Part shown: positions 7,879-24,397 of the stretch, piece by piece
How positions within the stretch are numbered: position 1 is the stretch's first letter
Layout: each line of letters starts with the position of its first letter
Assembly: GCF_006345805.1 (NCBI RefSeq)
Contig: NW_021836204.1
Span: 1-25,126, forward strand
Source of the DNA: Octopus sinensis
Lineage: Eukaryota
DNA length: 25,126 nucleotides
Direction of reading: 5' to 3'
The notes under the pieces: model-generated
Told to the model about the DNA's origin: nothing
Database searches by the model: none
What the model saw: only the letters and a program-made list of their open reading frames with translations
Program-made: the position numbers and the translations under genes

Positions 7879-7926
<48 letters not shown>

Positions 7927-7957: not shown

Positions 7958-9061
7958 TTATGTTTGACTATTGCTTTACATTTGTACAAGTTGGCTCCAG
8001 GTCTCACCCAGAAACTTCAAGAGACAACAAGTTGGAAGTTCATGTTGGTGTTATGCCTAAGGTGCCATATATTTGGTTTTGTACATAGTGTTGTTCTAGA
8101 GAATGTCTAAGAAACCATAAGAAAATTATGTTTGTTTTAAAACTTGAGATTACATAGAAAGTATTTTGCGTAGGATATGGACAGTTCCCATGAGCACTAT
8201 CTTTTGAATTTCTGCCATTTTGGGGTTTTCTGGTATCTGAGCTAGGTAGCAATCAACCCCTTTTGCTATTTCCAGGGCACCTATGACAACAGGTATTGTT
8301 TTAGTCTTCAGGTTCCACATTTTGCTAATTTCTATTTCAAGATCTTTATACTTGCTCAGTTTTTGGTAGGTCTTGACAGATACATTTATATCGATTGGGA
8401 CAGTCATATCAATGAGGGGGCATGATTTTTGTCTGAAATCTTTCAATATGATGTCTGGCCTATTTGCATCTATCTTTCTGTCAGTTTGAATGGTGAAGTT
8501 CCAGAGGAGTGAGATGTGATCATTTTCAAGCATTGGAGGTGATTTGTGTTCCCACCAGTTTTTATCATGGGGCAAGTCCAGGTTTTTGCAATTTACCCAG
8601 TGAATATATTGTGCAGCTCTATCATGCCTGTTGAGATATTCTGTAGGCGCAAGAAGACTGCATTTGGAGACAACATGATCAATGGTTTCATTTTGAGGTT
8701 GACATACACGACATGTTGGGAAGCTACCGTTCTTTAATATGTTGGCCTGGTAGTTCCTTATAGGTAGACATTGATCTTGGGCTGCTATGATAAACCCTTC
8801 TGTTTCAGATTTTAAGCCAGAGGCCATTAGCCATTGATGGGTGAGGGCTTTGTCAACACAGGCACTATTCGCTCTCTTTGGGTATTTGCCATTGAGAGGT
8901 CTTTCTTGCCATCTATCAGTCAGAATATCTAAGGCAGCAGTTTTAGCACGAGCTTTCATGTGCTTAGCTTTTTCTGTGCTTGTTTCTCGTATATCTAATT
9001 CCGGAATTTGTTGTGTTTGGAATTCACTTAGATATTCCTTTGCCTGTTTTGTTACTGAATA
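7958..9061 (-). mobile_element. 5'-truncated R4/Dong-clade non-LTR retrotransposon (RLE type)
   Basis: The ORF carries a CCHC knuckle (CRVCQPQNETIDHVVSKC), RHD, and the restriction-like endonuclease signature RPDIILKD...LIDMTVP...KLSKYKDL. The frame stays open upstream to about 9061, where it abuts (TAA/CAA)n. A 3' UTR of about 190 nt ends in (TAA)n. No RT domain is retained. Confidence 0.9.
8150..9061 (-). pseudogene. C-terminal fragment of an R4/Dong ORF (zinc knuckle plus RLE)
   Basis: Track ORF 8150..8959 plus an in-frame upstream extension YSVTKQAKEYLSEFQTQQIPELDIRETSTEKAKH. The Met at 8959 is internal. Confidence 0.85.
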
Positions 9062-9085
9062 TTATTATTGTTGTTGTTGTTGTTG

Positions 9086-9135
<50 letters not shown>

Positions 9136-9159
9136 GTAGTAGTAGTAGTAGTAGTAGTA
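9062..9159. repeat. (TTA)/(TTG)n/(TTA)n/(TAG)n compound tract
   Basis: Direct reading. Confidence 0.9.
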
Positions 9160-9160
9160 A

Positions 9161-9190
9161 TCTAATCTCGTTTTTTTTCTTCTTGCACAG
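9161..9190 (+). promoter_or_regulatory. putative 3' splice acceptor (branch point, polypyrimidine tract, CAG)
   Basis: tCTAATctcg ttttttttcttctt gcaCAG ending at 9190. An alternative CAG ends at 9200. Confidence 0.7.
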
Positions 9191-9293
9191 AAACCAACAG
9201 CGAAAGAATCCTGGAGCCCAAATGATTTATAGTCTTATTATTAAATTAGAATAAAATAAGATACAAAAATAAAAGGAAGAAGTTAAAAGGAAA

Positions 9294-10136
9294 ATGGATC
9301 CGGAAGGAGAAAAAAATCCAGAACGTCCAAAGAGTATATTTCATTTGCTTAGAAACAGCTTTAAAAAGGGTTTTTCTTCGCCGAGCAAAACCAAGAAAGT
9401 CGAAGGAATCGAAACACACGAAGATCCCAACATCAAAGAAAACGACGCTGTGAAGAACGGCATTCTCAGAACAGAAACGTCGCAGGATAACAGCACAACA
9501 GCCTCTAGTGTTAGTAAGTCACTTAAAAAATATCTCCCTGAAACTTCTCTAGATTTGAATTTGGATTCAAATTTAAACGGAGGACTAGAAACACCTAAAC
9601 AATATGTTGCTCCGTTGGGATCTGCCGAAAGCCAGAAAGAAGGCGTCGAGGAATCAGAAGCAGAAGAAAAGGAAGAAAAAGAAAAAGATGTAAGAACTGA
9701 AGAACAAGAAAAAATCGTAATAACTAAAGAGAAAGAAAAAGATGTACTGACTGAAGAAATAGAAAAAGGTGTAAAAACTGAAGAAAATGAAAATGAAAAA
9801 GAAAAAGATGTGGCGAAAACTGAAGAAATAGAAAAAGATGTGGCGAAAACTGAAGAAATAGAAAAAGATGTGGCGAAAACTGAAGAAATAGAAAAAGATG
9901 TGGCGAAAACTGAAGAAATAGAAAAAGATGTGGCGAAAACTGAAGAAATAGAAAAAGATGTGGCGAAAACTGAAGAAATAGAAAAAGATGTGGCGAAAAC
10001 TGAAGAAATAGAAAAAGATGTGGCGAAAACTGAAGAAATAGAAAAAGATGTGGCGAAAACTGAAGAAATAGAAAAAGATGTGGCGAAAACTGAAGAAATA
10101 GAAAAGAGGTGGCGAAAAAACGAAGAAAAGAAATAG
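9294..10136 (+). CDS. giant acidic disordered protein, segment 1 (N-terminus and 10-aa DVAKTEEIEK repeats); frame breaks at about 10105
   Basis: ATG in good context (aaaATGg) with in-frame stops upstream. The repeat register is lost by a 1-nt deletion in a poly-A run, after which the repeat continues in another frame. Confidence 0.75.
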   Translation: MDPEGEKNPERPKSIFHLLRNSFKKGFSSPSKTKKVEGIETHEDPNIKENDAVKNGILRTETSQDNSTTASSVSKSLKKYLPETSLDLNLDSNLNGGLETPKQYVAPLGSAESQKEGVEESEAEEKEEKEKDVRTEEQEKIVITKEKEKDVLTEEIEKGVKTEENENEKEKDVAKTEEIEKDVAKTEEIEKDVAKTEEIEKDVAKTEEIEKDVAKTEEIEKDVAKTEEIEKDVAKTEEIEKDVAKTEEIEKDVAKTEEIEKDVAKTEEIEKRWRKNEEKK

Positions 10137-10233
10137 AAAAAGTGTGGCGAAAAATGAAGAAATAGAAAAAGATATGTGGGCGAAAACTGAAGAAATAGAA
10201 AAAGATGCGGCGAAAACTGAAGAAATCGAAAAA
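9807..10233 (+). repeat. coding 30-bp tandem repeat, 14 units (DVAKTEEIEK)
   Basis: Nine identical copies of gatgtggcgaaaactgaagaaatagaaaaa at 9807-10076, then units of 29, 36, 29, 33 and 30 nt. Confidence 0.95.
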
Positions 10234-13200
10234 GATATTGAAAGAATTGAAGAAAGAGAAAGAGATGTAGTAAGTGAAGAAATAGAAAAAGAAGTTGTAA
10301 CAACTGAAGAAAGACAAAAGGATGCTATATTTGAAGAAAATGAAAAAGTTGTAAAAAGAATTGAGAAAGAAGGAGAAAAAGCTGCAATAATTACGGAAAA
10401 AGAAAAAGAAGAAATTATTGAAGAAGATGTAAAAGAACAAAAAATAGAAACTGAAGAGTCTATAAATAACCATGTTTCTTCCGATGGTGAAAATGTAGTT
10501 GTAAGAAATGGTAATTCACAAAGAGATAAAGATCTGATTGGTGCATACACAGAAAAGAATGTTGAACAAGAATGTGATGTGTCTGGAACTGCAGAAAAGC
10601 CACTGTCTCTGTTAAATTATATTCAAAGTAGTTCAACTATGGCTGAAAATAAAGTGGAGCCTCATGTGACATCAGACCAACTCTGTGAAAAACCTGATTT
10701 GACCGCAACAGATATATACAGCTCTGAAGATTCATCATCCCGTGCTGGAAAGCACGAATCCACGTTGCTCTCTAACGAAGATAAGGTTCTCCCAGACAAA
10801 AAGGACAACGTTTCCTCTCAATCGTTCCCTTCTGCTGCTTCTCTTCCTTCCCATTCTTCTTACTTTGAAGAGAAACAATTAGACAAGGAAAAGGAAGAGC
10901 CAAAACCAGAAAGTAATTCGTCAGATCCATTATCTTCGGAAGTTAAAATGGATAGTAAGAATGATAATACTGATAGCTCTGAAAATAAAAAAGATATCTC
11001 AGACAGTGTTGCTCCCAAAATTACACGTCAGCCAGAATTTTCGAGATGGGGTGCGTTTCTTCCAAAGCCATATTCGAAAACATCACAACAACCCTTCAAG
11101 AAATTTTCACAATTTTTTCTGGGTAAATCGAAGTCAGCAGCGAAGCTTTCGTCAGATTCATCGCCGCAGTTACAATCAACGAGTTCAACAACCACCAATT
11201 CCGCAATCCCGCCAACTCTTCGCACCGATTCCTCACTTCCTTTATTACCCTCGCAAATTGCAACATCCTCTCCCAGACACGCTAACCAGCAGTTGCAATC
11301 TCAAGAACAAATTTCTACACCTTTACACCCTCAGCACACACTATCTTCGTCTTCCATACCACAATCAAAAATATCTTCAGTGGAATTATCTCCATCATTG
11401 TCCGCGGCACCGTCCCCACCTCAAGCTGAAATAATGACCACAGCATCCTCTGTGACACTGGATACAGTACAACTTGATGCATTAAAGAAGGAAACATCTG
11501 TGACATTGCATGAGGTGCCATCTGTCACTCCAGATAAGAAACTGCCGGAGGTACCATCCATCACATTGAGTGAAAAACTACCTGAGGTCCCATCGGTGAC
11601 ATTAGATGAGAAACTGCCTGAGGTACCATCAGTGACATTAGATGAGAAACTGCCTGAGGTACAATCCGTGACATTGAATGAGAAACTGCCTGATGTACCA
11701 TCAGTGACATTAGATGAGAAACTTCCTGAGGTACCATCAGTGACATCGGATAAGAAACTGCCTGAGGTACCATCAGTGACATTAGATGAGAAACTGCCTG
11801 AGGTACCATCAGTGACATTGGATGAGAAACTGCCTGAGGTACAATCCGTGACATTGAATGAGAAACTGCCTGAGGTACCATCAGTGACATTAGATGAGAA
11901 ACTTCCTGAGGTACCATCAGTGACATTGGATAAGAAACTGCCTGAGGTACCATCAGTGACATTAGATGAGAAACTGCCTGAGGTACCATCAGTGACATTG
12001 GATGAGAAACTGCCTGAGGTACAATCCGTGACATTGAATGAGAAACTGCCTGAGGTACCATCAGTGACATTAGATGAGAAACTTCCTGATGTACCATCAG
12101 TGACATTGGATAAGAAACTGCCTGAGGTACCATCAGTGACATTAGATGAGAAACTGCCTGAGGTACCATCAGTGACATTAGATGAGAAACTGCCTGAGGT
12201 ACAATCCGTGACATTGAATGAGAAACTGCCTGATGTACCATCAGTGACATTAGATGAGAAACTACCTGAGGTACCATCAGTGTCATTAGATGAGAAACTG
12301 TCTGAGGTACCATCAGTGACATTAGATGAGAAACTGCCTGAGGTACCATCAGTGACATTGGATGAGACGCTGCCTGAGGTACAATCCGTGACATTGAGTG
12401 AAAAACTTCCCGAGTTGCCATCTGTGACATTGGATGAGAAACTGCCTGAGGTACCATCAGTGACATTAGATGAGAAACTGCCTGAGATACCATCGGTGAC
12501 ATTGAATGAGAAACTGCCTGAAGTACCATCAGTGACATTGGATGAGAAACTGCCTGAGGTACCATCAGTGACATTAGATGAGAAACTGCCTGAGGTACCA
12601 TCAGTGACATTAGATGAGAAACTGCCTGAGATACCATCAGTGACATTAGATGAGAAACTGCCTGAGGTACAATCTGTGACATTGAGTGAAAAACTTCCCA
12701 AGTTGCCATCTGTGACATTGGATGAGAAACTGCCTGAGGTACCATCAGTGGCATTGGATGAGAAACTGCCTGAGGTACAATCCGTGACATTGAGTGAAAA
12801 ACTTCCCGAGTTGCCATCTGTGACATTGGATGAGAAACTGCCTGAGGTACCATCAGTGACATTAGATGAGAAACTGCCTGAGGTACCATCAGTGACATTA
12901 GATGAGAAACTCCCTGAGGTACCATCAGTGACATTAGATGAGAAACTGCCTGAGGTACCATCAGTGACATTGGATGAGAAACTGCCTGAGGTACCATCAG
13001 TGACATTAGATGAGAAATTGCCTGAGGTACCATCAGTGACATTAGATGAGAAACTGCCCGAGGTACCATCAGTGACATTGGATGAGAAACTGCCTGAGGT
13101 ACCATCAGTGACATTAGATGAGAAACTGCCTGAGGTACCATCAGTGACATTGGATAAGAAACTGCCTGAGGTACCATCAGTGACATTGGATGAGAAACTG

Positions 13201-16200
13201 CCTGAGGTACCATCAGTGACATTAGATGAGAAACTGCCTGAGGTACCATCAGTGACATTGGATGAGAAACTGCCTGAGGTACAATCCGTGACATTGAGTG
13301 AAAAACTTCCCGAGTTGCCATCTGTGACATTGGATGAGAAACTGCCTGAGGTACCATCAGAGTCATTAGATGAGAAACTGCCTGAGGTACCATCAGTGAC
13401 ATTGAATGAGAAACTGCCTGAGGTACCATCAGTGACATTAGATGAGAAACTGCCTGAGGTACCATCAGTGACATTAGATGAGAAACTGCCTGAGGTACCA
13501 TCAGTGACATTAGATGAGAAACTGCCTGAGGTACCATCAGTGACATTAGATGAGAAACTGCCTGAGGTACCATCAGTGACATTAGATGAGAAACTGCCGG
13601 AGGTACCATCAGTGACATTAGATGAGAAACTGCCTGAGGTACCATCAGTGACATTAGATGAGAAACTGCCTGAGGTACCATCAGTGACATTGAATGAGAA
13701 ACTGCCTGAGGTACCATCAGTGACATTAGATGAGAAACTGCCTGAGGTACCATCAGTGCCATTAGATGAGAAACTGCCTGAGGTACCATCAGTGACATTA
13801 GATGAGAAACTGCCTGAGGTACCCACAGTGTCATTAGATGAGAAACTGCCTGAGGTGCCATCTGTGTCATTAGATGAGAAACTGCCTGATGTACCATCAG
13901 TGACTTTAGATGAGAAACTGCCTGAGGTACCATCAGTGACATTAGATGAGAAACTGCCTGAGGTACCATCAGTGACATTGGATGAGAAACTGCCTGAGGT
14001 ACAATCAGTGACATTAGATGAGAAGCTCCCTGAGATACCATCAGTGACACTGGGAGATAAACTCCCTGAGGTGCCATCTGTGATATTAGATGAAAAGTTG
14101 CCTGAGGTAGTATCTGTGACACTGGATGAGAAAATGCCGGAGGTACCATCTATGCCATTGGAAAACAAGCAGATCGAGGTACCATCTGTACCACAGTCTT
14201 ATTCACAATCTGAGGTACAGGCTAAGGAATTGACTGTGCTTCAATTTAATGCATTGCTTGAGTCTACCTCTTTAAACCCAGTTGAGGAACTATCTGTAAG
14301 ACCAACTGTTGCTGTGTCTGAAGCGCAATCTCTAAAATTAAGTGAGGTACCGCCCCTAGTACCAACACCGGAACCGTCTTTGGCACCATCAGTGACACAA
14401 TCTGTGGAATCATCTCTGGACTTATCTCCTGAAGTGTCTGTAGAATCATCCATAACGGTATCTGAGGTTTCCTCCCTTAATTCGTCTGCTACTTTTCCTC
14501 TCTCACAATCACCTTCTACACAAACTTTGCACTCATTGCCACCGACACCACCTGGAACGATGTCGCCGATGCAGCCTGAAACAGAAATACCTCTGCTAAC
14601 ACAACCGTCGACATCCCCGACAACTTCCCGTTTCTTTTTTTCGTCACCATCGACAGAGACTTCCTCTTCCCCCACCTCGTCTCTAACCACGCTGTCGTCA
14701 CATTCTCGTGCAACGCCACCGACAGCGAGTGTTGAAGGAGATAGCAGCAGTGTGAACGGAAATTTTACAATTATATACCAAGATGCTAACCACGTAGTCC
14801 AGCACCTAAGCGACGACATGTACAAGACAATGAAACAGAGCATCAAACGAGGCCGTGTGAAGGAACTGCAGAAGATATTTTCTGCATACATATATGACAA
14901 AGATGACTTGCATCAAAATAAAGCCCACTATATAAATGGCGGAGAAATATCAGATACTTCTTGGGCACATACAATCGGAACGAAACCAATAGGATATAAA
15001 CCAGTAGAAAGTAATTTGAATCAGATACTTCGTGTACAAAACAAGCAAAACGAAGTACAACGAGAAGAAAAAGAACTGAAAACAGGGGAAGAAAAGAAAG
15101 AACTACTCAATTATGAACTGGAGCAAAAACAGCAAATAGAGATAACAGAAAATACTTTCATCAACGCAGATGTGGCCTCCGTTCCCCTCTATTCTACTCC
15201 AGACAATGCTATGCAAAGTGGAGACACTATTTATAAAACAGAGCCAAATATACTGACAAATATATCGGACACATCATTTAATACGTCCGAAGCTGAGGAA
15301 GTGGGGCTGGTTTCTGAACGTCTCATTAACGTCGAGCAACAACAAACAGAAGAGTCTCTATCGCTACCGTCGACTGGTTTTCAAACTACGATCACATCAG
15401 ATATAATGTATCCTGAGCAGCAATGTAGATTGGAATCGATGTCTAAAATTAACGACAACATCCGGAACGAAAGCGACGAGAATAGCAGTTACGAAATAAT
15501 TAATACGATCACCAACAACGACAACAGTAATATCGACATTAAAAGCAACAACGACAATGATCTCTACAGCAACAACAACGATATAAAAGGTGTCATTGAA
15601 ACAAAAACGGATAATTATGTTCGCGGAGAAGATATGACAGAAGAGGTGCTTGTTGTTGAGGTGAATAGAAAGGTGGAAACTATCAACGACAGTAATGTCG
15701 TTAACGAACAAAACAGTAGCCAGATCAACAATATACATGGCGACGACGACGACGACGATAACAACAATAACAACATCACCTTGGGGACGTTTTCCACAGA
15801 TGAGGGGAAAACTGAATCACTGTTGTACTCAAGAAATATTTCAGAGTCAACGGTGACCGACCAGGAGTACAGCAATGGAATTAGAACCAGTGGAAATGAA
15901 GAATTCATAGTAAAAGATATTCCATCAGAAACATCAGGCGAATCCGAAATCGTAGAACAACAAATAGAAAACCAGATAACCAATAAAATTGATGCCAATA
16001 CAGAGCTTGAAGTTGAAGCTGAAGTAGGGAACGAGCTTAGTGAGACGTCTGTAAAGCCAATTAGAAAAGAAGAAACCGAACAGTCTGGTAGAGAGGATGC
16101 CGAGATCAGAAAAAAAGATTTACCACAAAGCCCAGAAAAAGTTCATAACAAAACCAATATACAAGAATTGTCGATTTTCGACATTTCAAAAACTGTCAGA

Positions 16201-19200
16201 AAACACAAAGTAAGAAAACTTGCAAGGATCTGGCCGCCAACAAGATATGCGGATGATGAAGCAGATACATATCTTAATTTTCAACCTTGGAAGAAAGAAA
16301 ATGACATGAATTCAGAGAAAGAGAATCAAAATGCTGGTGGAAATGTGGAAGACAATGAAACTAACTTGTTGAACGGTACTCAGACACACATCCTAGAAGA
16401 TACCGCAACTGTGATTGAGAAATACAGACCAACAGCTCAAGAAAGACTCAGAATTGTTAACAAACATATTGGAGAAAGAACAGTTGGTGTAACTAAAGGA
16501 CTCCTGCCCTCACCTGACAGTAAAGTTGTACATGAGACCGTGGAAGTTAGCCCACCCACAGACACACAAGAAACTCTCCCTTCAGTAAACAAAGAAATTG
16601 TATATGAGACTATAGAAGATAGCCCGCCAACAGTAGCACAAGAAACCTCTGACAGAGAGATACATGAGACTGTGGAAGTTAGCCCATCGACAGATTTGAC
16701 AAACTTTGCTGAAATTTCATCAGTCAAGGAAGCCGAAGAATGTTTAGAAACCTTGCCTGCAATGAAAAGTGAAACTATAATGAAAGCTTGTGATGAACCC
16801 CTCTTTAAAAAAACAGAAGAATCTATCACTTTCTTGAAGAAAGAAGATGCTGATGATGTTAAAGAAATTACTTCTGCTACAAAAGATGAAGAAAATTTTG
16901 TCCCAGATAAGCGCGTTGCTGACGTGCACTCATTGAATGACTCTGAAATAACTGGCAAAATTATTAAGACTGAGCAATCACGTAGACCCAGTGTTCAAGA
17001 AAGACTCAGGATTGTAAACAGCCGGATTACTCAGATAAGAAATAATATTCCGGCTCAACAAACAGAAGAAATTATCCTTAAAACAAATGAGATTGCTCCT
17101 GATACAAAGGTCCCTGAGACAACTGATTCTGTAACCAGTAATACTGCACACGGTCTTCATGAGGTAACCCCACTAATTCAGTCACAAGGATTCAGTACCC
17201 TGAACACTGAAGTTGCACACAAGTCCGCGGAAGTTAGCCCACCATTAAACACACAAGAATCTATTCTTTCAGTAAGCAAAGAAGTTGTACAGGATTCTGT
17301 AGAAGCTAGCCTTCCAACCGTCACACAAGAAGCTGTCTCTTCAGTGGACAGTGAAGTCGTACATGAAGTTGTGGAAGTTAGTCTTCCAACCGTCACACAA
17401 GAAGCTCTCCCTTCAGTGGACAGTGAAGTCGTACATGAAGTTGTGGAAGTTAGCCTTCCAACCGTCACACAAGAAGCTCTCCCTTCAGTGGACAGTGAAG
17501 TCGTAGATGAAACTGTGGAAGTTAGCCTACCAACCATCACACAAGAAACTTTTCCTCCAGTGGACAGCGAAGTCGTACATGAAATTGTAGAAGTTAGCCC
17601 ACCAACCGTCACACAAGAAACGCTCTCTTCAGTGGACAGTGGAATCGTACATGAAGTTGTGGAAGTCAGCCTACCAACCATCACACAAGAAGCACTTCCT
17701 CCAGTGGACAGTGAAGTGGCATATGAAGCTGTGGAAATTAGCCCACCAACCGTCACACAAGAGACTATCCATTCAGTGGACAGCGAAGTCGTACATGAAA
17801 TTGTGGAAGTTAGCCTACCAACCGTCATTCAAGAACCTGTCCATTCAGTGGACAGTGAAGTCACACATCAAATTGTGGAAGTTAGCCTACCAACCGTCTC
17901 ACAAGAGGCTGTCCCTTCAGTGGGCAGTGAAGTCGTAGATGAAACTGTGGAAGTCAGCCTTCCAACCGTCACACAAGAAGCTCTCCCTTCAGTGGACAGA
18001 GAAGTCGTACATGAAATTGTGGAAGTTAGCCTACCAACCGTCTCACAAGAGGCTGTCCCTTCAGTGGGCAGTGAAGTCGTAGATGAAACTGTGGAAGTCA
18101 GCCTTCCAACCGTCACACAAGAAGCTGTCCCTTCAGTGGACAGCGAAGTCGTACATGAAATTGTGGAAGTTAGCCTACCAACCGTCTCACAAGAGGCTGT
18201 CCCTTCAGTGGACAGTGAAGTCGTAGATGAAACTGTGGAAGTCAGCCTTCCAACCGTCACACAAGAAGCTGTCCCTTCAGTGGACAGCGAAGTCGTACAT
18301 GAAATTGTGGAAGTTATCCTACCAACTGTCTCACAAGAGGCTGTCCCTTCAGTGGGCAGTGAAGTCGTAGATGAAACTGTGGAAGTTAGCCTTCCAGCCG
18401 TCACACAAGAGGCTGTACCTTCAGTGGACAGCGAAGTCGTACATGAAGTTGTGGAAGTTAGCCCCCCAATCGTCTCACAAGAGGCTATCCCTTCAGTGGA
18501 CAGCGAAGTCGTACAGGAAGTTGTGGAAGTCAGCCTACCAGCCGTCATTCAAGAACCTGTCCATTCAGTGGACAGTGAAGTCACACATCAAATTGTGGAA
18601 GTTAGCTTACCAACCGTCTCACAAGAGGCTGTCCCTTCAGTGGACAGTGAAGTCGTACATGAAGTTGTGGAAGTTAGCCTTCCAACCGCCACACAAGAAG
18701 CTCTCCCTTCAGGGGAAAACGAAGTCGTAGGTGAGACTGTGGAAGTTAGCCTATCAACCGTCACAAAAGAAACGCCTCCTTCACTAGATCAAGTAGTAGG
18801 TGAAGATTTCGAAGTTACCCCTATAAGCTATGAAGTTGCCCCTTCTTCGGTAACAAGTGAAAATATACAAGTTATTTCGGAAATGAACCCACCTGTGGAT
18901 ATTCCATCTGATTTTGAAGTACAACCTGTTGTTATCCCTGGCAATGATGAGGTTTTAATAGAAAAAGAAGAAGGGCTTCATGCTTCATCGGCGATGAATA
19001 CTGAGCAAGTTGAACGTGTGAATGTGGAAGAGGATACGATAAGCCTTGCAGAGAGTATTTCTGATACAATACCTGATAAATTCGAGAGCATAATGGCGTA
19101 CGTTTTGCAAAGGGAAAACAGTCAAGGAAGTAACGAGATAATAAGCGACCATGCAGAATTACCAGAATGCTACAAGCAAGGTTCGCTTCTCTCCATTTCG

Positions 19201-19914
19201 AACGAAGAAAAGCAAATACTCAAAGCAAATCAACCACCCACTGCCAGTGCAGTGGAAAGCGATGCTCCAGAGGCGAAGAGAGAAACTGACGATCTGGATG
19301 ATGTAAGAGATGAAATTGAAATCGTCTACAGTGTAAAAACAGAAGATATCAACGAATTTAAGGGAGAAATGGAAACTGTGACTGGAATGGGAGTTACGAG
19401 TGGGGAAACACTGGAAGAAATTAATGCGAATGAAAATACAAGTGGAAAAATAGACCTCCCTGTCGGAGAAATAGAGCGTGACATAGACGATGAAGAAAAG
19501 AAAGAAGGACAAGAAAAAGAAGAAAAAGAGAGTGAAGAGTTGGTAGTGATAGGGTCAACTGATGTCGTCGTGGTAGCAGGAGAGAAAGAAGAAGAAAGAG
19601 AAGAGGAGTCGTTAGAGAAGGAGGAAAGCCAGATAGAAAAGGTCGAAGCAGAAGAGGCAATGGTAATGTTGTCAGAGGAAAAACAGAAAGAAGACGAGAA
19701 GGGCAAAGAAATTGTGATTTCAGAAAATCTACCGATTGATAATGAAAACACATTGAGTTCAGTTTCTATGCTTGAAGTAAACAAGTTAGGGGAAAGAGAG
19801 GAAAACCTTTTAACAAAGAAAGGCGTGTCAAAAGTAACAATACCTTCTTCAGAAGCGCTCCTTCATTTGTTCAGTCATGTGCTTCTGTTGACACCAATGA
19901 AAAAGAAGCAATAA
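10144..19914 (+). CDS. giant acidic disordered protein, segment 2 (12-aa and 24-aa tandem arrays); real frame probably switches at about 19856
   Basis: 3256-codon ORF including long non-repetitive stretches. The listed GTG start is internal to the 30-bp repeat. The last about 19 residues (LLHLFSHVLLLTPMKKKQ) look out of frame. Confidence 0.85.
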   Translation: MAKNEEIEKDMWAKTEEIEKDAAKTEEIEKDIERIEERERDVVSEEIEKEVVTTEERQKDAIFEENEKVVKRIEKEGEKAAIITEKEKEEIIEEDVKEQKIETEESINNHVSSDGENVVVRNGNSQRDKDLIGAYTEKNVEQECDVSGTAEKPLSLLNYIQSSSTMAENKVEPHVTSDQLCEKPDLTATDIYSSEDSSSRAGKHESTLLSNEDKVLPDKKDNVSSQSFPSAASLPSHSSYFEEKQLDKEKEEPKPESNSSDPLSSEVKMDSKNDNTDSSENKKDISDSVAPKITRQPEFSRWGAFLPKPYSKTSQQPFKKFSQFFLGKSKSAAKLSSDSSPQLQSTSSTTTNSAIPPTLRTDSSLPLLPSQIATSSPRHANQQLQSQEQISTPLHPQHTLSSSSIPQSKISSVELSPSLSAAPSPPQAEIMTTASSVTLDTVQLDALKKETSVTLHEVPSVTPDKKLPEVPSITLSEKLPEVPSVTLDEKLPEVPSVTLDEKLPEVQSVTLNEKLPDVPSVTLDEKLPEVPSVTSDKKLPEVPSVTLDEKLPEVPSVTLDEKLPEVQSVTLNEKLPEVPSVTLDEKLPEVPSVTLDKKLPEVPSVTLDEKLPEVPSVTLDEKLPEVQSVTLNEKLPEVPSVTLDEKLPDVPSVTLDKKLPEVPSVTLDEKLPEVPSVTLDEKLPEVQSVTLNEKLPDVPSVTLDEKLPEVPSVSLDEKLSEVPSVTLDEKLPEVPSVTLDETLPEVQSVTLSEKLPELPSVTLDEKLPEVPSVTLDEKLPEIPSVTLNEKLPEVPSVTLDEKLPEVPSVTLDEKLPEVPSVTLDEKLPEIPSVTLDEKLPEVQSVTLSEKLPKLPSVTLDEKLPEVPSVALDEKLPEVQSVTLSEKLPELPSVTLDEKLPEVPSVTLDEKLPEVPSVTLDEKLPEVPSVTLDEKLPEVPSVTLDEKLPEVPSVTLDEKLPEVPSVTLDEKLPEVPSVTLDEKLPEVPSVTLDEKLPEVPSVTLDKKLPEVPSVTLDEKLPEVPSVTLDEKLPEVPSVTLDEKLPEVQSVTLSEKLPELPSVTLDEKLPEVPSESLDEKLPEVPSVTLNEKLPEVPSVTLDEKLPEVPSVTLDEKLPEVPSVTLDEKLPEVPSVTLDEKLPEVPSVTLDEKLPEVPSVTLDEKLPEVPSVTLDEKLPEVPSVTLNEKLPEVPSVTLDEKLPEVPSVPLDEKLPEVPSVTLDEKLPEVPTVSLDEKLPEVPSVSLDEKLPDVPSVTLDEKLPEVPSVTLDEKLPEVPSVTLDEKLPEVQSVTLDEKLPEIPSVTLGDKLPEVPSVILDEKLPEVVSVTLDEKMPEVPSMPLENKQIEVPSVPQSYSQSEVQAKELTVLQFNALLESTSLNPVEELSVRPTVAVSEAQSLKLSEVPPLVPTPEPSLAPSVTQSVESSLDLSPEVSVESSITVSEVSSLNSSATFPLSQSPSTQTLHSLPPTPPGTMSPMQPETEIPLLTQPSTSPTTSRFFFSSPSTETSSSPTSSLTTLSSHSRATPPTASVEGDSSSVNGNFTIIYQDANHVVQHLSDDMYKTMKQSIKRGRVKELQKIFSAYIYDKDDLHQNKAHYINGGEISDTSWAHTIGTKPIGYKPVESNLNQILRVQNKQNEVQREEKELKTGEEKKELLNYELEQKQQIEITENTFINADVASVPLYSTPDNAMQSGDTIYKTEPNILTNISDTSFNTSEAEEVGLVSERLINVEQQQTEESLSLPSTGFQTTITSDIMYPEQQCRLESMSKINDNIRNESDENSSYEIINTITNNDNSNIDIKSNNDNDLYSNNNDIKGVIETKTDNYVRGEDMTEEVLVVEVNRKVETINDSNVVNEQNSSQINNIHGDDDDDDNNNNNITLGTFSTDEGKTESLLYSRNISESTVTDQEYSNGIRTSGNEEFIVKDIPSETSGESEIVEQQIENQITNKIDANTELEVEAEVGNELSETSVKPIRKEETEQSGREDAEIRKKDLPQSPEKVHNKTNIQELSIFDISKTVRKHKVRKLARIWPPTRYADDEADTYLNFQPWKKENDMNSEKENQNAGGNVEDNETNLLNGTQTHILEDTATVIEKYRPTAQERLRIVNKHIGERTVGVTKGLLPSPDSKVVHETVEVSPPTDTQETLPSVNKEIVYETIEDSPPTVAQETSDREIHETVEVSPSTDLTNFAEISSVKEAEECLETLPAMKSETIMKACDEPLFKKTEESITFLKKEDADDVKEITSATKDEENFVPDKRVADVHSLNDSEITGKIIKTEQSRRPSVQERLRIVNSRITQIRNNIPAQQTEEIILKTNEIAPDTKVPETTDSVTSNTAHGLHEVTPLIQSQGFSTLNTEVAHKSAEVSPPLNTQESILSVSKEVVQDSVEASLPTVTQEAVSSVDSEVVHEVVEVSLPTVTQEALPSVDSEVVHEVVEVSLPTVTQEALPSVDSEVVDETVEVSLPTITQETFPPVDSEVVHEIVEVSPPTVTQETLSSVDSGIVHEVVEVSLPTITQEALPPVDSEVAYEAVEISPPTVTQETIHSVDSEVVHEIVEVSLPTVIQEPVHSVDSEVTHQIVEVSLPTVSQEAVPSVGSEVVDETVEVSLPTVTQEALPSVDREVVHEIVEVSLPTVSQEAVPSVGSEVVDETVEVSLPTVTQEAVPSVDSEVVHEIVEVSLPTVSQEAVPSVDSEVVDETVEVSLPTVTQEAVPSVDSEVVHEIVEVILPTVSQEAVPSVGSEVVDETVEVSLPAVTQEAVPSVDSEVVHEVVEVSPPIVSQEAIPSVDSEVVQEVVEVSLPAVIQEPVHSVDSEVTHQIVEVSLPTVSQEAVPSVDSEVVHEVVEVSLPTATQEALPSGENEVVGETVEVSLSTVTKETPPSLDQVVGEDFEVTPISYEVAPSSVTSENIQVISEMNPPVDIPSDFEVQPVVIPGNDEVLIEKEEGLHASSAMNTEQVERVNVEEDTISLAESISDTIPDKFESIMAYVLQRENSQGSNEIISDHAELPECYKQGSLLSISNEEKQILKANQPPTASAVESDAPEAKRETDDLDDVRDEIEIVYSVKTEDINEFKGEMETVTGMGVTSGETLEEINANENTSGKIDLPVGEIERDIDDEEKKEGQEKEEKESEELVVIGSTDVVVVAGEKEEEREEESLEKEESQIEKVEAEEAMVMLSEEKQKEDEKGKEIVISENLPIDNENTLSSVSMLEVNKLGEREENLLTKKGVSKVTIPSSEALLHLFSHVLLLTPMKKKQ
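11533..14196 (+). repeat. coding 36-bp tandem repeat, 73 units plus one degenerate (DEKLPEVPSVTL)
   Basis: Consensus gatgagaaactgcctgaggtaccatcagtgacatta. 11533-14160 is exactly 73 x 36 nt with no net indel. Confidence 0.97.
16543..16700 (+). repeat. detached degenerate copies of the 72-bp coding repeat
   Basis: EVSPPTDTQETLPSVNKEIVYETI / EDSPPTVAQETSDREIHETV / EVSPST with unit starts at 16543, 16615 and 16675. Confidence 0.75.
17230..18810 (+). repeat. coding 72-bp tandem repeat, 21 units plus one degenerate (EVSLPTVTQEAVPSVDSEVVHEIV)
   Basis: Unit starts from 17230 to 18742 span 21 x 72 nt; the final unit is 69 nt. Confidence 0.95.
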
Positions 19915-22900
19915 AAGACATAGCAACGGACGTTACACCGATAACTACAACAATAGCAACAACAACAACAACCACTACGACAGTAATCGCAACAGCTACA
20001 ACAGATTTGACTCAGAAAGTGTTAAAAAAGTCGGACGAAACAGGAGTGGTGGTGGGAGAAGAAATTACTTTAGTTGAAGCAGAAGATAATATTGTGCCGA
20101 CAATCGCCAGTGAAATACATTCAACTCCAACTAGTGTTGAAAACATACAAACTGTCGTGGTTAGTGGGACATATTTAGGAGACGGTGTTGGTAATAAAGA
20201 AGAGGAAGGGGAGGAAAAGAAAGAAGACGACAAAGAAAAAGAGGAAGGAATAAGTACAGTAGACGGAGAAGAAACGCATTTAAAAGAAGACAATTCTGGC
20301 AGTAATCTCGACCGTGTTTCATACATTCCCTATTATTCAACCAACTCTGAGATGTTAACCCGGCTTAAACAACCACCAGAGGGTAATCAGACACCGCTGA
20401 TAAAAAGTGATTCAACTGCAACAGCAGCAGCTAAAACAACAATAATAACAACAAAGAGCAATGGTACTATATCTACATACCCTGCAGTTACAAATACCGT
20501 CATAACAGAAAGTAGCACAAGTATTAGCCCAGAACACGACACGGGTACGGGAGAGAGATTAGTATACGGATTGAGTTCAGTTGAAAAAACTCAAGGAGAA
20601 AATGTGCGAGAAAATGAATCTGTTGTATTGGCTGCATCGAAAGAGAGTGAAAGCAATAGAGATTTTAACGGCGAGCAAAAAGCGAAATACCCAGGCTCGG
20701 CAACAGTCAGTAGAAGCTCAAGCAGCTGTAGTAGTCTGGGCAGCAATTTTCTTGGAGAGTTTGCCTCCCAAGAGTACAGTGAAGAGAATGTGAAAGCGGA
20801 ACCAACGGTCATCAAAAGCACGAAAGAAACCGAGAAAGAGCAAGTGGTGACCGGAAAACCAGTAAATTTCCTCCGTCGTTTTTTCGAATCAGGGCGATCA
20901 ATTTTCGGTGAGACGAAGAAAACAAGTGACAAGTCTACTGCAGAACCAGTTGAATACATTACGAACGGTACTGTTCACTCTCGACACCTGCAAGATTCAA
21001 ACGGATTACTAAGAGAGCATGAAACAATTGATGCCAACAAAAACAACGACCAAATAACTCGTTGGACGACTCCTGTTACCGCGAATGAACCACTCGCGTC
21101 TCAACCCAATAAGCCAGCTGACGCCGCAAGTTTAACTGGTTACAATGATGCTAGACCCGGAACAGTGGTTGAAGCAAACTTAACCGGTTCAGAAGTTGTG
21201 AATCATGATGTCAGCGGCGATCGGTCTCGTGTTGAGAATTTGAATGCACTTAGTTCATTTGAGAACACTTTTCCAGACTCGGTTGACGTTCAAAATCAGA
21301 CGCAGCGCTCACCAAGCTCAGAATACCCTGAGGAAGAATCGAGGGCAGACTATTTCACTGTTAACAACCCTTTACTGAAAAACAGCACTGAATATGTTGC
21401 CCCTGAAATTCAACAAACTTCTAACCAAATGGTTGCTGCTCCACCATTCAAGAAAGACAATGGAACTGCTGAAGATGTACACGCACATATTAGTACACCT
21501 GTAGAAACTTTACCTTCGAGTGAAATTAATAGGAATGAAAACAATGACCTGTGGACAGTAGAAGACCCAAGTGCAATAAACAAACGTATCAGAGCCGATG
21601 GAGTCATCGACTATGATATTATGCAACCGTTGAAGAATAAATTAATTAACGATGAAACGCTCGAGTCTCAACCAAATATTCTTGCTCAAACCGCTGAAAA
21701 TACATTTTCGGAAAATTCAGTTATTACACAGCAACCAACCCAAGCGGTCATATCAAACACTGAGACCGGTTTGACAACTTCTGAAAATTATAAAACACCA
21801 TCGTCTAGGAATGTTGAAATTTCTAGTCCAGCTATTGTAGAAAGCTTTGTGACATCGGAACGACGTCAAAGCTTTCTGCTTTCGCCCACACTAAATGACG
21901 AAGAAAACGACATTGAAGATGGAAGTATAGCGATAAGTGAACAAAAAAGGGAAGCTTTAATCAAGGGAAACGTACATCGTAGAATCAAAGCATTTGAGGT
22001 GCCGAAAGATACAATCATGAATGTAAATAGCAAGCCAGTTAAATCAAGATCCCGGTCTTCCTTATATGATAGTGCAGGTGAAGGCAGCACTGAATTTTTA
22101 TACGAGAAAGTGAGAAGCGAATTGCGCCCAATACCAGCAAAAAAAATGGTAGAATCTAATTTTATAGAGGAGCACACTACAGATTCAGGACCAGCATATA
22201 TTTCCAAGTTAGACAATGGCTTAGAAACAACAATAACACCTTCTCCGATAATTTATCGAGAAACTTCGAATGTAATTGAAAACCATATTGAGGATAGGCC
22301 AGACGATAATGATTCGGATCATCAGTATAAAGTGGTCAGGTTAACACCATCAACTGGGGAACACAACCAAATAAAGCGCGTTATTTATTGTGAAATCAAC
22401 CGAACAAACATGGAAAATAATACAAACGATACTCATTCATCTGAAAGTGGGGATGAACTCTCCGATAACGAAAACCATCAGATGAAGAAACAGAAAAGGA
22501 TTAATCACCAGTTCATGCCGAATGTAAATAAACCGGAGGCAACTATACTACAAACATCTTCAAATTATGTGTTACGTTCGCAGCCGCCAGAACCTACTGT
22601 TGTTAAAAAGAACCATTCCGAAAATTTTGTAGATTCCGGAACGGGAACCGAAACGGTCAGCTCCGAAGGTGAAGCAGAAACAGTAGAAACTTCGACAGGG
22701 TACAGGTTTATGCCACAAGTCAACTACCAAAAAGCAATTTTGATACCGTCACAAAATACATACGAGCCACCCAAACAGACTATTACGATGGAATATGTAC
22801 AGAAGAATTCTTCCACACCAACCATAGCACGACCGACCACTCTTGTTAAAAATTCATCGAGCATCGAAGCACATAAAATCTATGAATTGAACACAGAACC

Positions 22901-23178
22901 GGAAAGTGTTTCAGCATCCGATGCGGAAGAAGATTTGAGAATCGTCAGGGGAAAATTACTTATCAAAAATGTTATCGATTCGCCGAAAGACGGAGACGAT
23001 TTCGATGACAATATTAATGTGTTTGCTGATGGTTTTCACTTGGATAAAGAAAACCCACTCTACCAAAGTGATCCGGATCTATCCAAGAGAGATGAAAGCG
23101 ATGAAGAATCTGAAACCCAAGAGTGGAATGATGATATTACATTCGAAACTATTGATGAAATTGCTAAAACACACACAG
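19857..23178 (+). CDS. giant acidic disordered protein, segment 3, ending at a phase-1 splice donor
   Basis: The frame of ORF 20007..23207 is open back to 19776 and reads APSFVQSCASVDTNEKEAIKDIATDVTPITTTIATTTTTTTTVIATATTDLTQKVL. It ends ...EIAKTHT-G|gtaagt, so the listed tail GKLVLYYIF is intronic. Confidence 0.8.
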
Positions 23179-23184
23179 GTAAGT
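23179..23184 (+). promoter_or_regulatory. 5' splice donor GTAAGT (phase 1)
   Basis: Perfect consensus CAG|GTAAGT, immediately followed by AT-rich microsatellite DNA. Confidence 0.85.
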
Positions 23185-23306
23185 TAGTCTTATATTATAT
23201 TTTTTAATGATTGAACGTAATTAAACTAAGTTTTCTCATTAAGCATTTTTATACTTTTACACTGTTGAGAGAATATACTCACACATACATATAGACATGA
23301 AAGAGA

Positions 23307-23365
<59 letters not shown>

Positions 23366-23387
23366 ATATATATATATAGATAGATAC

Positions 23388-23418
<31 letters not shown>

Positions 23419-23467
23419 TCTGTATATGTATATACATACATACGCACAAACCTCTGTGGGTGTATAT

Positions 23468-23509
<42 letters not shown>

Positions 23510-23722
23510 ATTATACACATATAAACACATACACGTACATCTATACGGATAACACATATGTTAATTAATGCTTATACATACATTCGTATCTATCTATCTA
23601 TATAAATGTGTGTGTCTGTTTCTCTATCTCTCTCTCTGTTCTTGTGTGTGTGTTATATGTATATATATGATATGTATATATATGTACATGTATATATATA
23701 ATATAGATATATAATATATATA

Positions 23723-23763
<41 letters not shown>

Positions 23764-23959
23764 GTGTGTCTGTACACACACACACACATATACGTATAGG
23801 ACTTAACACCAGGTCGAATCAAAGCTACATATGATATAGGGCTGGGCCTTTGAATTTTATATTATATACATACATACATACACACACACACACATATATT
23901 ATATATGTATATAGGGAGAATAAATGTATATGTGTGTGTCTGTGTGTCTGTGTGTGTAT

Positions 23960-23994
<35 letters not shown>

Positions 23995-24110
23995 TATATA
24001 TATACGTGTGCATATATACATATATACATATTACTTATAGGCATATGTATATGTGTATATGCATATGCATATGAATAAATATATAAATAAACATATATGT
24101 ATATATATGT
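23307..24110. repeat. compound (TA)n/(GATA)n/(GT)n/(CA)n microsatellite field (intronic)
   Basis: Direct reading. Confidence 0.85.
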
Positions 24111-24353
24111 ATATACATTCTTTTTTATTGTTGATAGGGAGAGTCATTCTGTTTTAGTACCTTATTATTTAACACACTCACCGGTTCGATTTCCCACCAC
24201 ACCTTTACTTATTTATATTCCCTAAAATGTTCGTTATTTCTTGCAACCTCTTCAAAAGTCGATGATATATAAGCTGGCATCCCTTTAAGTAGATTTATAT
24301 CCTTGATTTATATGTATAGATGTAAGTATGTACATATACTTATGTACATATTC

Positions 24354-24397
<44 letters not shown>

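What the first reader, a model, noticed from the sequence alone, without database searches (positions are those of the whole stretch)
9191..23178. About 14-kb single exon encoding some 4,630 residues of an unnamed acidic, repeat-built protein
Seen: one acceptor, one donor and no intron-like sequence between them, in a genome whose non-coding DNA is saturated with microsatellites. The product is rich in E, S, T, V and P, has no evident signal peptide, transmembrane segment or globular domain, and holds three unrelated tandem arrays (10, 12 and 24 aa) separated by unique spacers. Known: giant exons encoding disordered spacers occur in titin-like proteins, giant ankyrins and Futsch/MAP1B-type proteins. 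Inference: a lineage-specific giant cytoskeletal or scaffold isoform (molecular spring or ruler) whose identifying domains lie in downstream exons. This is the strongest candidate for undescribed biology here.
Basis: partly seen in the sequence, partly recalled or inferred. Interest (0 to 1): 0.8.

Follow-up and report, generated by a model that had tools for sequence, protein, structure and literature searches.

The report
Giant orphan repeat-rich coding exon
A roughly 14-kb stretch, probably from a cephalopod genome, really does encode about 4,600 residues of an acidic, repeat-built, mostly unstructured protein with no detectable relatives, but as written it has two reading-frame breaks, and the gene it belongs to cannot be named from this window.

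Summary
The coding signal is real. Between a strong acceptor (AG 9189-9190) and a consensus donor (CAG|GTAAGT, 23178|23179) lie three long open frames on the + strand: 9273-10136, 10102-19914 and 19776-23207. Their unique parts have no stop in the coding phase and 11-109 in each other phase.

It is not one uninterrupted frame. The phase shifts inside the 10-residue array (about 10105-10143) and again within 19776-19914. Three single-base gains restore 4,629 stop-free codons from ATG 9294. I cannot tell assembly error from real frameshift. A short intron at the second break is possible but weak.

All three frames are closed between 9191 and the ATG. The protein therefore seems to start in this exon, unlike a giant-ankyrin or titin insert.

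The conceptual product is about 508 kDa with pI 4.4, no signal peptide and no transmembrane segment. Three arrays (10 aa x ~17, 12 aa x 73, 24 aa x 20) make up a third of it. No Pfam domain and no homologue turned up in 5.8 billion proteins or 1.84 billion cluster representatives.

Best reading: the first coding exon of a lineage-specific intracellular scaffold or spacer protein. The function is inferred only.

The parts
9161..9190 (+). Putative branch point (tctaatc), pyrimidine tract and AG acceptor
   Evidence: Sequence read (gttttttttcttcttgcacag|aaacc). Acceptor score is 9.4 with 85% pyrimidines, well above every internal candidate.
9191..9293 (+). Non-coding leader of the exon (5'UTR part). 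Stops in all three frames. A 10-codon upstream ORF lies at 9222-9254.
   Evidence: The open frame starts only at 9273, and the first ATG is at 9294 in an A(-3)/G(+4) context.
9294..10136 (+). Open frame 1: likely start codon, 167 unique residues, then the first part of the 10-residue array. Ends at a TAG created by the frame break.
   Evidence: There are 0 stops in the coding phase and 11 and 14 in the other two phases over 9294-9794.
9795..10324 (+). 30-nt (10-aa) tandem array, consensus EIEKDVAKTE, about 17.5 copies. Nine of the ten leading units are identical at the DNA level.
   Evidence: TRF; unit analysis; pI 4.4.
10080..10143 (+). Frame break 1. Two successive array units are 29 and 35 nt long instead of a multiple of 3. 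The phase moves from 0 to 1 mod 3, and the same peptide repeat continues in the new phase.
   Evidence: Two single-base gains within 10095-10145 restore the frame. No credible intron candidate exists, because the region is purine-rich.
10102..19914 (+). Open frame 2, 3,270 codons: the end of the 10-aa array, spacer 1, the 12-aa array, spacer 2, the 24-aa array and spacer 3.
11507..14150 (+). 36-nt (12-aa) array, consensus LPEVPSVTLDEK, 73 copies with no indels. Differences from consensus by codon position are 41/22/99, and changed codons are 88 synonymous against 57 non-synonymous. The first 28 units show a 5-unit higher-order period.
14151..17297 (+). Unique spacer 2 (1,048 codons). It holds the most order-prone segment (14720-15000) and the basic/hydrophobic islands KRGRVKELQKIF (14815), HKVRKLARIWPP (16168) and QERLRIVN twice (16420, 16978).
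   Evidence: AlphaFold2 on 14689-15150 gives a mean pLDDT of 54 and only a few helices. The exhaustive phmmer search returned 0 hits.
17298..18771 (+). 72-nt (24-aa) array, consensus VEVSLPTVTQEAVPSVDSEVVHEI, 20.5 copies with no indels and a 2-unit higher-order period. It is 26% valine with pI 4.05.
   Evidence: The AlphaFold2 model is all-beta but weak: best pLDDT 64, the other four models 25-51. No structural match in the PDB.
19776..19914 (+). Frame break 2: a 139-nt overlap of open frames 2 and 3, where the phase returns from 1 to 0 mod 3.
   Evidence: One single-base gain anywhere in 19774-19914 restores the frame. Alternative short introns (19785-19852, read by eye and not among the pairs listed; 19777-19874, score 7.2) are far weaker than the flanking sites.
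19776..23178 (+). Open frame 3 up to the donor (about 1,117 coding residues, unique sequence). It contains the islands VNFLRRFFESGRSIFG (about 20900) and KGNVHRRIKAFE (21942).
   Evidence: The homologue search returned 0 hits.
23179..23207 (+). Consensus donor GTAAGT (phase-1 intron). The open frame closes 27 nt further on, at 23205-23207.
   Evidence: 12.5 bits. GC falls to 0.26-0.30 and microsatellites resume downstream.

Best explanation
What it is: the giant first coding exon of a lineage-specific gene, probably cephalopod.

Structure as read: an acceptor at 9190 brings in a short non-coding leader. Translation most likely starts at ATG 9294 and runs about 4,629 codons to a consensus donor at 23178, then continues into exons outside the window.

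The frame breaks: the two phase breaks in the given sequence are most simply three missing single bases in A-rich runs. These are either assembly under-calls or very recent mutations, because 3,270 and 1,143 codons stay open on either side of them.

The product: a cytoplasmic or nuclear polyanion of about 0.5 MDa (pI 4.4) without a stable globular fold.

Inferred mechanism:
- The three tandem arrays act as long extended spacers. The E/K-rich 10-mer array is probably helical. The proline-punctuated, V/E-rich 12-mer and 24-mer arrays are probably extended or beta-prone.
- Their length is set by copy number, so they would work as an entropic spring, ruler or charged brush.
- About nine short basic/hydrophobic islands in the acidic chain would be the docking sites for partners such as membrane, calmodulin-like proteins or the cytoskeleton.
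- Any identifying folded domain would lie in downstream exons.

Shown: coding status, boundaries, repeats, composition, and the absence of homologues and domains.
Inferred: start codon use, the cause of the frame breaks, disorder, and all of the function.
For: - Coding: 0 stops in phase against 11-109 out of phase in every unique segment. The observed open run of 1,048 codons compares with a maximum of 199 in 500 shuffles.
- Selection on the peptide in the 12-mer array: differences from consensus are 41/22/99 by codon position, changed codons are 88 synonymous against 57 non-synonymous, and there are no indels across 73 + 20 units.
- Boundaries: the acceptor (9.4) and donor (12.5 bits) are much stronger than any internal frame-restoring GT..AG pair. 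The open frame closes 27 nt after the donor. GC is 0.415 and AT-skew +0.25 inside, against 0.275-0.35 and about -0.06 in the flanks. There are no microsatellites inside and 39 outside.
- Start in this exon: all three frames are closed in 9191-9272.
- Frame repair: three single-base gains give 4,629 codons with 0 stops. The same 10-mer peptide repeat continues across break 1.
- Physical character: pI 4.36, cysteine and tryptophan 0.2% each, no hydrophobic segment. Pfam finds no domain. The AlphaFold2 models are low-confidence.
- Orphan status: 0 hits.
- Taxon: the neighbouring retrotransposon fragment has an Octopus bimaculoides protein (76% identity) as its closest named relative. That also shows the database holds proteins from that species.
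Against: - As written, the sequence does not encode one polypeptide. Translation from ATG 9294 stops at 10136 after 280 residues.
- There is no transcript, read or orthologue evidence of any kind, so the splice sites, the start codon and the single-exon status are predictions.
- Disorder is inferred from composition and from single-sequence AlphaFold2, which is weak evidence for an orphan.
- The best AlphaFold2 model of the 24-mer array is all-beta with pTM 0.52, so that array may be ordered rather than spring-like.
- Nothing in the window ties the protein to the cytoskeleton.
Confidence: 0.6

Rival explanations
1. The region is two or three exons rather than one. A short intron removes the second phase break, for example 19785-19852 (68 nt) or 19777-19874 (98 nt), and possibly another removes the first. 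The frames would then be correct as sequenced.
For: Frame-restoring GT..AG pairs exist at break 2, with fair pyrimidine-rich acceptors: ataccttcttcag at 19852 and tttgttcag at 19874.
Against: - Their donors are poor: GTTAGG read by eye, and GTAAAC at 2.6 bits against 12.5 for the flanking donor.
- The candidate introns have exon-like composition and stay open in both frames.
- At break 1 the sequence is purine-rich, with no pyrimidine tract, and the only in-window pair is 28 nt long.
Confidence: 0.12
2. The frameshifts are real and the locus is a recently inactivated pseudogene, or it makes only the 280-residue N-terminal product. The long downstream frames have simply not yet decayed.
For: The sequence as given has a net shift of -2 at 10080-10143 and -1 at 19776-19914. 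No annotated protein from any species matches the region.
Against: - 3,270 and 1,143 codons remain stop-free in a 58% A+T sequence where the other phases hold 6-10% stops. Any inactivation would have to be very recent.
- All the required corrections are single-base gains in A-rich runs. From my general knowledge, that is the usual direction of homopolymer error in long-read assemblies.
Confidence: 0.12
3. It is a secreted or extracellular protein, mucin-like or an acidic matrix protein, whose S/T/P/E-rich arrays are glycosylated or bind mineral.
For: Serine, threonine and proline together make up 27% of the product. From my general knowledge, tandem arrays in a single large exon are typical of mucins, and acidic repeat proteins are common in mollusc matrices.
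Against: - There is no signal peptide. The first 40 residues reach a maximum 9-residue hydropathy of 0.63.
- There is no hydrophobic segment anywhere.
- Upstream coding exons are excluded by stops in all frames after the acceptor.
- The product has only 9 cysteines and none of the cysteine-rich flanking domains.
Confidence: 0.05
4. It is not a gene: a stop-free minisatellite region that mimics an open frame.
For: The arrays are open on both strands, for example 925 codons on the minus strand at 11421-14198.
Against: Two thirds of the region is unique sequence that is open in one phase only. Its codon-position composition is coding-like, and its open runs are more than five times the maximum seen in shuffles.
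Confidence: 0.01

Closest known systems
Giant ankyrins (vertebrate 440-kD ankyrin-B and 480-kD ankyrin-G; Drosophila Ank2-L/XL)
   Same: A single very large exon encodes an extended, unstructured polypeptide. Giant ankyrin-B even carries tandem 12-residue repeats. Such exons arose independently in flies and vertebrates and share minimal sequence homology (PMC7401806).
   Different: - The ankyrin-B 12-mers are basic (pI 10.6) and bind microtubules (PMC7401806). The 12-mers here are acidic (pI 4.1).
- Ankyrin giant exons are internal or 3' coding exons that follow the ANK, ZU5 and UPA exons. Here all frames are closed upstream of ATG 9294.
- No sequence similarity was found.
AHNAK / AHNAK2 / periaxin
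   Same: - A giant exon encodes most of a protein of about 700 kDa.
- The repeats carry a recurring proline-centred motif of alternating hydrophobic and hydrophilic residues, modelled as a beta-strand 'polyionic rod' (PMC2196192, PMC10682155).
- The 12- and 24-residue units here (LPEVPSVTLDEK, VEVSLPTVTQEAVPSVDSEVVHEI) have the same proline-punctuated alternation, and AlphaFold2 draws the 24-mer array as beta strands.
   Different: - No PDZ domain is found.
- The units are 12 and 24 residues, not 128 built of heptads.
- The product is strongly acidic rather than polyampholytic.
- AHNAK's giant exon carries the stop codon, whereas this exon ends at a donor.
- The resemblance is at the level of pattern only, and no alignment was tested.
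Articulins, alveolins and plateins (protist membrane-skeleton proteins)
   Same: Tandem repeats with 12-residue periodicity, rich in valine and proline (PMC4303705). The array here is 16% V, 16% P and 16% E. Its EKLPEVP stretch resembles the alveolin EKIVEVP sub-repeat, which I recall from memory. Pfam IMCp (PF12314) scores 62.5 bits on the array alone.
   Different: - The Pfam score falls to 11 bits (E = 0.5) when the whole open frame is scored.
- Arrays with permuted units score 26-98 bits against unrelated families, so the hit is not evidence of homology.
- Those proteins are small (under 1,000 residues) and known from protists. This one is a roughly 4,600-residue metazoan protein with two other arrays.
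Elastic PEVK / PEVT segments of titin-family proteins (vertebrate titin, Drosophila Sallimus, C. elegans TTN-1)
   Same: P, E, V and T (or K) make up 52-60% of the two large arrays. From my general knowledge, invertebrate titins carry such tandem, disordered, elastic arrays in large exons.
   Different: - The Pfam PPAK motif was not hit.
- There are no Ig or Fn3 exons in the window.
- Translation appears to start in this exon.
- The arrays are acidic, whereas titin PPAK repeats are basic (from memory).
MAP1B/Futsch and the MAP2/MAP4/tau projection domains
   Same: From my general knowledge, these have an acidic, repeat-bearing, unstructured projection region encoded largely by one or a few very large exons, with the functional binding repeats elsewhere in the protein.
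   Different: No similarity to any of them was found in the Pfam scan or in the database searches. The tubulin-binding repeats, if present, would lie outside the window.

Membership tests
Giant ankyrin | The giant exon is an in-frame insert that follows the ANK-repeat, ZU5 and UPA coding exons | tested here: not met
   All three frames hold stops between the acceptor at 9190 and ATG 9294. No ANK, ZU5 or death-domain hit appears in Pfam. This assumes that 9190 is the acceptor actually used.
Giant ankyrin | Basic microtubule-binding 12-residue repeats and a BG-box (PMC7401806) | tested here: not met
   The 12-mer array has pI 4.12 and a net charge of -124 over 880 residues. The BG-box was not searched for as such, and the three database searches returned no hit of any kind.
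Titin PEVK | PPAK / polyE motifs (Pfam PF02818) flanked by Ig/Fn3 domains | tested here: not met
   No PPAK, I-set or fn3 hit at E <= 1 in any of the three open frames. Flanking exons outside the window cannot be tested.
Alveolin / articulin (Pfam IMCp, PF12314) | A profile match above the gathering score | tested here: inconclusive
   The score is 62.5 bits (cut-off 21.1) for the array alone but 11.1 bits for the whole frame. Permuted-unit controls reach 26-98 bits on unrelated families, so tandem repetition inflates scores.
Alveolin / articulin (Pfam IMCp, PF12314) | 12-residue periodicity, rich in V and P | tested here: met
   73 units of exactly 36 nt. V 16%, P 16%, E 16%.
AHNAK / periaxin | N-terminal PDZ domain | tested here: not met
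   No PDZ hit in Pfam. The N-terminal 167 residues are unique and unmatched.
AHNAK / periaxin | Repeats built of a 7-residue proline-centred motif with alternating hydrophobic and hydrophilic residues (PMC2196192) | tested here: inconclusive
   The units alternate and are punctuated by prolines, but their period is 12 or 24, not 7 or 128. No AHNAK sequence was available for alignment.
Mucin / secreted matrix protein | Signal peptide and S/T/P-rich tandem domain | tested here: not met
   There is no hydrophobic N-terminus (maximum 0.63) and no hydrophobic segment anywhere. S+T+P is 27% but E+D is 20%.
MAP2 / MAP4 / tau | C-terminal tubulin-binding repeats (Pfam PF00418) | not testable with these tools
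   These repeats would lie in exons beyond 25126. There is no hit within the window.

The most novel reading that the evidence does not exclude
A metazoan, cephalopod-restricted polymer protein of about 0.5 MDa. Its acidic, valine/proline-rich 12- and 24-residue arrays would form an extended beta-type rod or elastic filament, a convergent counterpart of protist articulins/alveolins or of the AHNAK 'polyionic rod'. It would have been built recently by minisatellite expansion and would be absent from current annotations.
Probability: 0.1. Interest if true: 0.7.

Novelty: new member of a known kind. Interest (0 to 1): 0.45.

Why it matters
If it is transcribed and translated, this would be one of the largest proteins of its genome. 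It found no relative among the 5.8 billion proteins or the 1.84 billion cluster representatives searched here, a collection that does hold proteins from an octopus.

Giant exon-encoded unstructured regions set distances and mechanical properties in neurons and muscle, as in giant ankyrins, titin and MAP1B, and they have arisen independently several times. A cephalopod-specific example would be a natural candidate for lineage-specific cell architecture such as giant axons, chromatophore muscle or suckers.

It is also a practical warning. Two small frame breaks in repeat-rich sequence could be enough for a gene of this size to be missed by annotation.

Tried and rejected
- Homology searches all returned nothing: the search for homologous proteins on 19908-23177; the same tool on the concatenated N-terminus, spacer 1 and spacer 3; exhaustive phmmer of 14650-17298 against 1.84 billion cluster representatives.
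- Exact-product look-ups for open frame 1 and for the Octopus retrotransposon protein P0037 found nothing on record. I had hoped P0037 would lead to an orthologous locus.
- Metagenome scans with the 36-nt unit and with a unique peptide segment gave no relatives.
- Rfam gave no hit.
- Literature searches for the repeat peptides, and for 'giant exon' with cephalopod or octopus, gave 0 papers.
- The Pfam IMCp, DUF4694 and other hits on the arrays were rejected as evidence of homology after the permuted-unit control.
- A common origin for the 12- and 24-residue units was not supported: 73 of 500 DNA shuffles and 94 of 1,000 protein shuffles reach the observed score.
- Foldseek of the 24-mer model against the PDB gave a best E-value of 0.22 and TM scores of about 0.1, which is uninformative.
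- An intron at break 1 was rejected for lack of any plausible acceptor.
- The Uversky charge-hydropathy scan did not discriminate, because the valine-rich arrays fall near the boundary.
- The 1992 AHNAK paper (PMC49314) is not held, so no AHNAK repeat sequence could be aligned.


Full report
**1. The observation**

The window holds three very long stop-free stretches on the + strand:
- 9273-10136, with codon starts = 0 mod 3;
- 10102-19914, = 1 mod 3, 3,270 codons;
- 19776-23207, = 0 mod 3, 1,143 codons.

These open frames are not a side effect of the repeats. In every unique, non-repeat segment the coding phase has no stop, while each of the other two phases has 11-109 stops. The first codon position is G-rich and the second is G-poor. 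Five hundred shuffles of 14151-17297 give a longest open run of mean 89 and maximum 199 codons, against 1,048 observed.

A pyrimidine tract and AG end at 9190, preceded by a branch-point-like tctaatc. A textbook CAG|GTAAGT donor sits at 23178|23179, and the frame closes 27 nt later. On a simple scoring scheme these two sites (9.4 and 12.5 bits) exceed every internal candidate.

Composition agrees with one exon:
- Inside, GC is 0.415 and A exceeds T by 25%.
- In the flanks, GC is 0.35 and 0.275 with a slight T excess.
- No microsatellite of 20 nt or more lies inside, against 39 outside.
- No 150-nt window inside looks intron-like.

**2.

The region is not one open frame.

*Break 1* lies inside the 10-residue array. 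After nine near-perfect 30-nt units come units of 29 and 35 nt (10080-10143). After them the same peptide repeat (…AKNEEIEKD…AKTEEIEKD…) continues in another phase. Later length changes (32 + 31 nt) are in frame.

*Break 2* lies somewhere in the 139-nt overlap 19776-19914.

Three single-base gains produce 4,629 codons with no stop from ATG 9294 to the donor. Two must fall within about 10095-10145, and one can fall anywhere in 19774-19914. All the needed corrections are gains in A-rich sequence. From my general knowledge, that is the direction of homopolymer under-calling in long-read assemblies, but I cannot test this without reads.

Frame-restoring introns are conceivable at break 2: 68 nt at 19785-19852, which I read by eye, or 98 nt at 19777-19874. 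Their donors are weak and their composition is exon-like. At break 1 there is no plausible acceptor at all.

All three frames also carry stops between 9191 and 9272. If 9190 is the acceptor, then 9191-9293 is a leader, with a 10-codon upstream ORF at 9222-9254. Translation then starts at ATG 9294, which has A at -3 and G at +4.

**3. Anatomy of the product**

The conceptual protein has about 4,615-4,629 residues and a mass of about 508 kDa, with pI 4.36. Its composition is E 14%, S 11%, V 11%, T 9%, L 8% and P 8%, and cysteine and tryptophan are each 0.2%. The most hydrophobic 19-residue window scores 0.97, so there is no membrane segment. The N-terminus (MDPEGEKNPERPKSIFHLLRNSFKKGF…) is not a signal peptide.

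A third of the coding length is tandem arrays:

| Array | Coordinates | Copies | Consensus unit | pI |
|---|---|---|---|---|
| 30 nt / 10 aa | 9795-10324 | ~17.5 | EIEKDVAKTE | 4.4 |
| 36 nt / 12 aa | 11507-14150 | 73 | LPEVPSVTLDEK | 4.1 |
| 72 nt / 24 aa | 17298-18771 | 20.5 | VEVSLPTVTQEAVPSVDSEVVHEI | 4.05 |

The two large arrays have no indels at all. In the 12-mer array, differences from the consensus fall 41/22/99 on codon positions 1/2/3, and changed codons are 88 synonymous against 57 non-synonymous. That is the signature of selection on the peptide. The arrays show higher-order periods, of 5 units in the first part of the 12-mer array and 2 units in the 24-mer array, which indicates growth by unequal exchange. 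The three unit types are not significantly related to each other.

About nine short basic/hydrophobic islands are scattered through the acidic chain:
- PKSIFHLLRNSFKKGF
- QPFKKFSQFFLGKSKS
- KRGRVKELQKIF
- HKVRKLARIWPP
- QERLRIVN (twice)
- VNFLRRFFESGRSIFG
- KGNVHRRIKAFE

**4. Relatives**

I found none. Pfam gives no credible domain. The three database searches together cover all the unique sequence, and all returned zero:
- the word-indexed search of 5.8 billion proteins with the C-terminal 1,090 residues;
- the same search with the N-terminus, spacer 1 and spacer 3;
- the exhaustive HMMER search of 1.84 billion cluster representatives with the central 883 residues.

Exact-product look-ups, metagenome scans, Rfam and literature searches were also empty.

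The database is not blind to the likely source lineage. A 5'-truncated non-LTR retrotransposon fragment on the minus strand just upstream (8150-9061) finds 377 relatives. The closest named one is an Octopus bimaculoides protein at 76% identity. The window is therefore probably cephalopod, and the giant exon found no match among the annotated proteins the collection holds.

**5. A false lead worth recording**

The 12-mer array alone hits Pfam IMCp (alveolin) at 62.5 bits. The same family scores only 11 bits when the whole frame is scored. Arrays in which the 12 positions are permuted identically in every unit reach 26-98 bits against unrelated families such as Drf_FH1 and MgtE_N. Tandem repetition multiplies any weak single-unit match, so this hit is not evidence of homology.

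What remains is a resemblance in kind. Alveolins, articulins and plateins are membrane-skeleton proteins built of valine- and proline-rich repeats with 12-residue periodicity (PMC4303705).

**6. Structure**

AlphaFold2 without an alignment gives only a few helices at a mean pLDDT of 54 for the most order-prone unique piece, 14689-15150.

For nine units of the 24-mer array I used shifted copies of the array as an alignment. The best model is all-beta with pLDDT 64 and pTM 0.52, but the other four models score 25-51. Foldseek finds nothing significant in the PDB. These results are weak. They fit a protein without a compact globular domain and leave open whether the valine-rich array is extended coil or an ordered beta structure.

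**7. Most likely explanation**

This is the giant first coding exon of a lineage-specific gene for an intracellular, strongly acidic, largely unstructured protein of about 0.5 MDa.

I infer that the arrays serve as copy-number-defined extended spacers (an entropic spring, ruler or charged brush), that the basic/hydrophobic islands are docking motifs, and that the remainder of the protein lies in downstream exons.

My confidence by layer:
- that this is, or very recently was, a real protein-coding exon: high, about 0.85-0.9;
- that it is one exon with sequence-level frame errors: moderate, about 0.6-0.65;
- that it works as a spacer or scaffold: low, about 0.3.

Rivals: short internal introns (0.12), a freshly frameshifted pseudogene (0.12), a secreted mucin or matrix protein (0.05), and a non-coding minisatellite (0.01, refuted).

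**8. Comparison with known systems**

The kind is known. Giant exons encoding extended unstructured regions occur in giant ankyrins, where they arose independently in flies and vertebrates and can carry 12-residue repeats (PMC7401806). They also occur in AHNAK, whose giant exon encodes proline-centred alternating repeats modelled as a beta 'polyionic rod' (PMC2196192, PMC10682155). From my general knowledge they occur too in titin PEVK/PEVT regions and in MAP1B/Futsch.

Membership in each was tested where possible and not met. There are no ANK/ZU5, PDZ, PPAK, Ig/Fn3 or tubulin-binding hits. The 12-mers are acidic rather than basic. Translation appears to start inside the exon.

I therefore file it as a new, orphan member of a known kind, not as a member of any named family.

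**9. Verdict**

The finding is real but overstated. It is worth a transcript and read-level check, and the gene cannot be named from this window. Interest 0.45.

Noticed in passing
window 8150-9061 (- strand), with (TTA)n at 7858-7961 and (TAT)n at 9060-9134: A 303-codon open frame encodes the C-terminal part of a non-LTR retrotransposon ORF2. It has a weak zf-RVT match, and its relatives carry RVT_1. It is 5'-truncated just upstream of the giant exon's acceptor. It has 377 relatives, and the closest named one is Octopus bimaculoides A0A0L8FXY1 at 76% identity, which is the only clue to the source organism.
   Followed up: partly
window 9222-9254 (+): A 10-codon upstream ORF (ATGATTTATAGT…TAA) lies in the putative 5' leader, in the same phase as the main ATG at 9294. 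A further in-phase stop sits at 9270-9272.
   Followed up: no
window 16420-16445 and 16978-17003 (+): The motif (A/V)QERLRIVN(K/S) occurs twice, 558 nt apart, in otherwise unique sequence. Each copy sits in a basic island of the acidic protein, so it may be a paired short linear motif.
   Followed up: no
window ~16480-16700 (+): Degenerate copies of the 24-residue unit (…VHETVEVSPPTDTQETLPSVNKEIVYETIEDSPPTVAQETSDREIHETVEVSPSTD…) lie about 600 nt upstream of the array proper. They suggest older, decayed units that TRF does not report.
   Followed up: no
window 11509-12500 and 17299-18771 (+): The arrays have higher-order repeat structure. Identity peaks at a lag of 5 units (180 nt) in the first 28 units of the 36-nt array (0.936 against about 0.89). 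It peaks at a lag of 2 units (144 nt) in the 72-nt array (0.886 against 0.854).
   Followed up: partly
window 11421-14198, 14241-14912, 17178-18548 (- strand); 4276-5059 (both strands): Long antisense open frames of up to 925 codons run over the coding arrays. Open frames of 190-250 codons run over the (TATG)152 microsatellite at 4429-5036. Both are artefacts of stop-free repeat units, not genes.
   Followed up: yes
window 1-9190 and 23179-25126: The flanks hold 39 perfect simple-sequence tracts of 20 nt or more, including (TA)46, (AT)59, (GT)41, (TAT)76, (CA)30 and (CTAT)49 running off the window end. Downstream GC is very low (0.26-0.30).
   Followed up: partly
method note: hmmscan whole-sequence scores on a perfect tandem array are strongly inflated. 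Composition- and period-preserving permutations of the 12-mer array reached 98 bits on Drf_FH1 and 50 bits on MgtE_N, both above the gathering cut-offs.
   Followed up: yes
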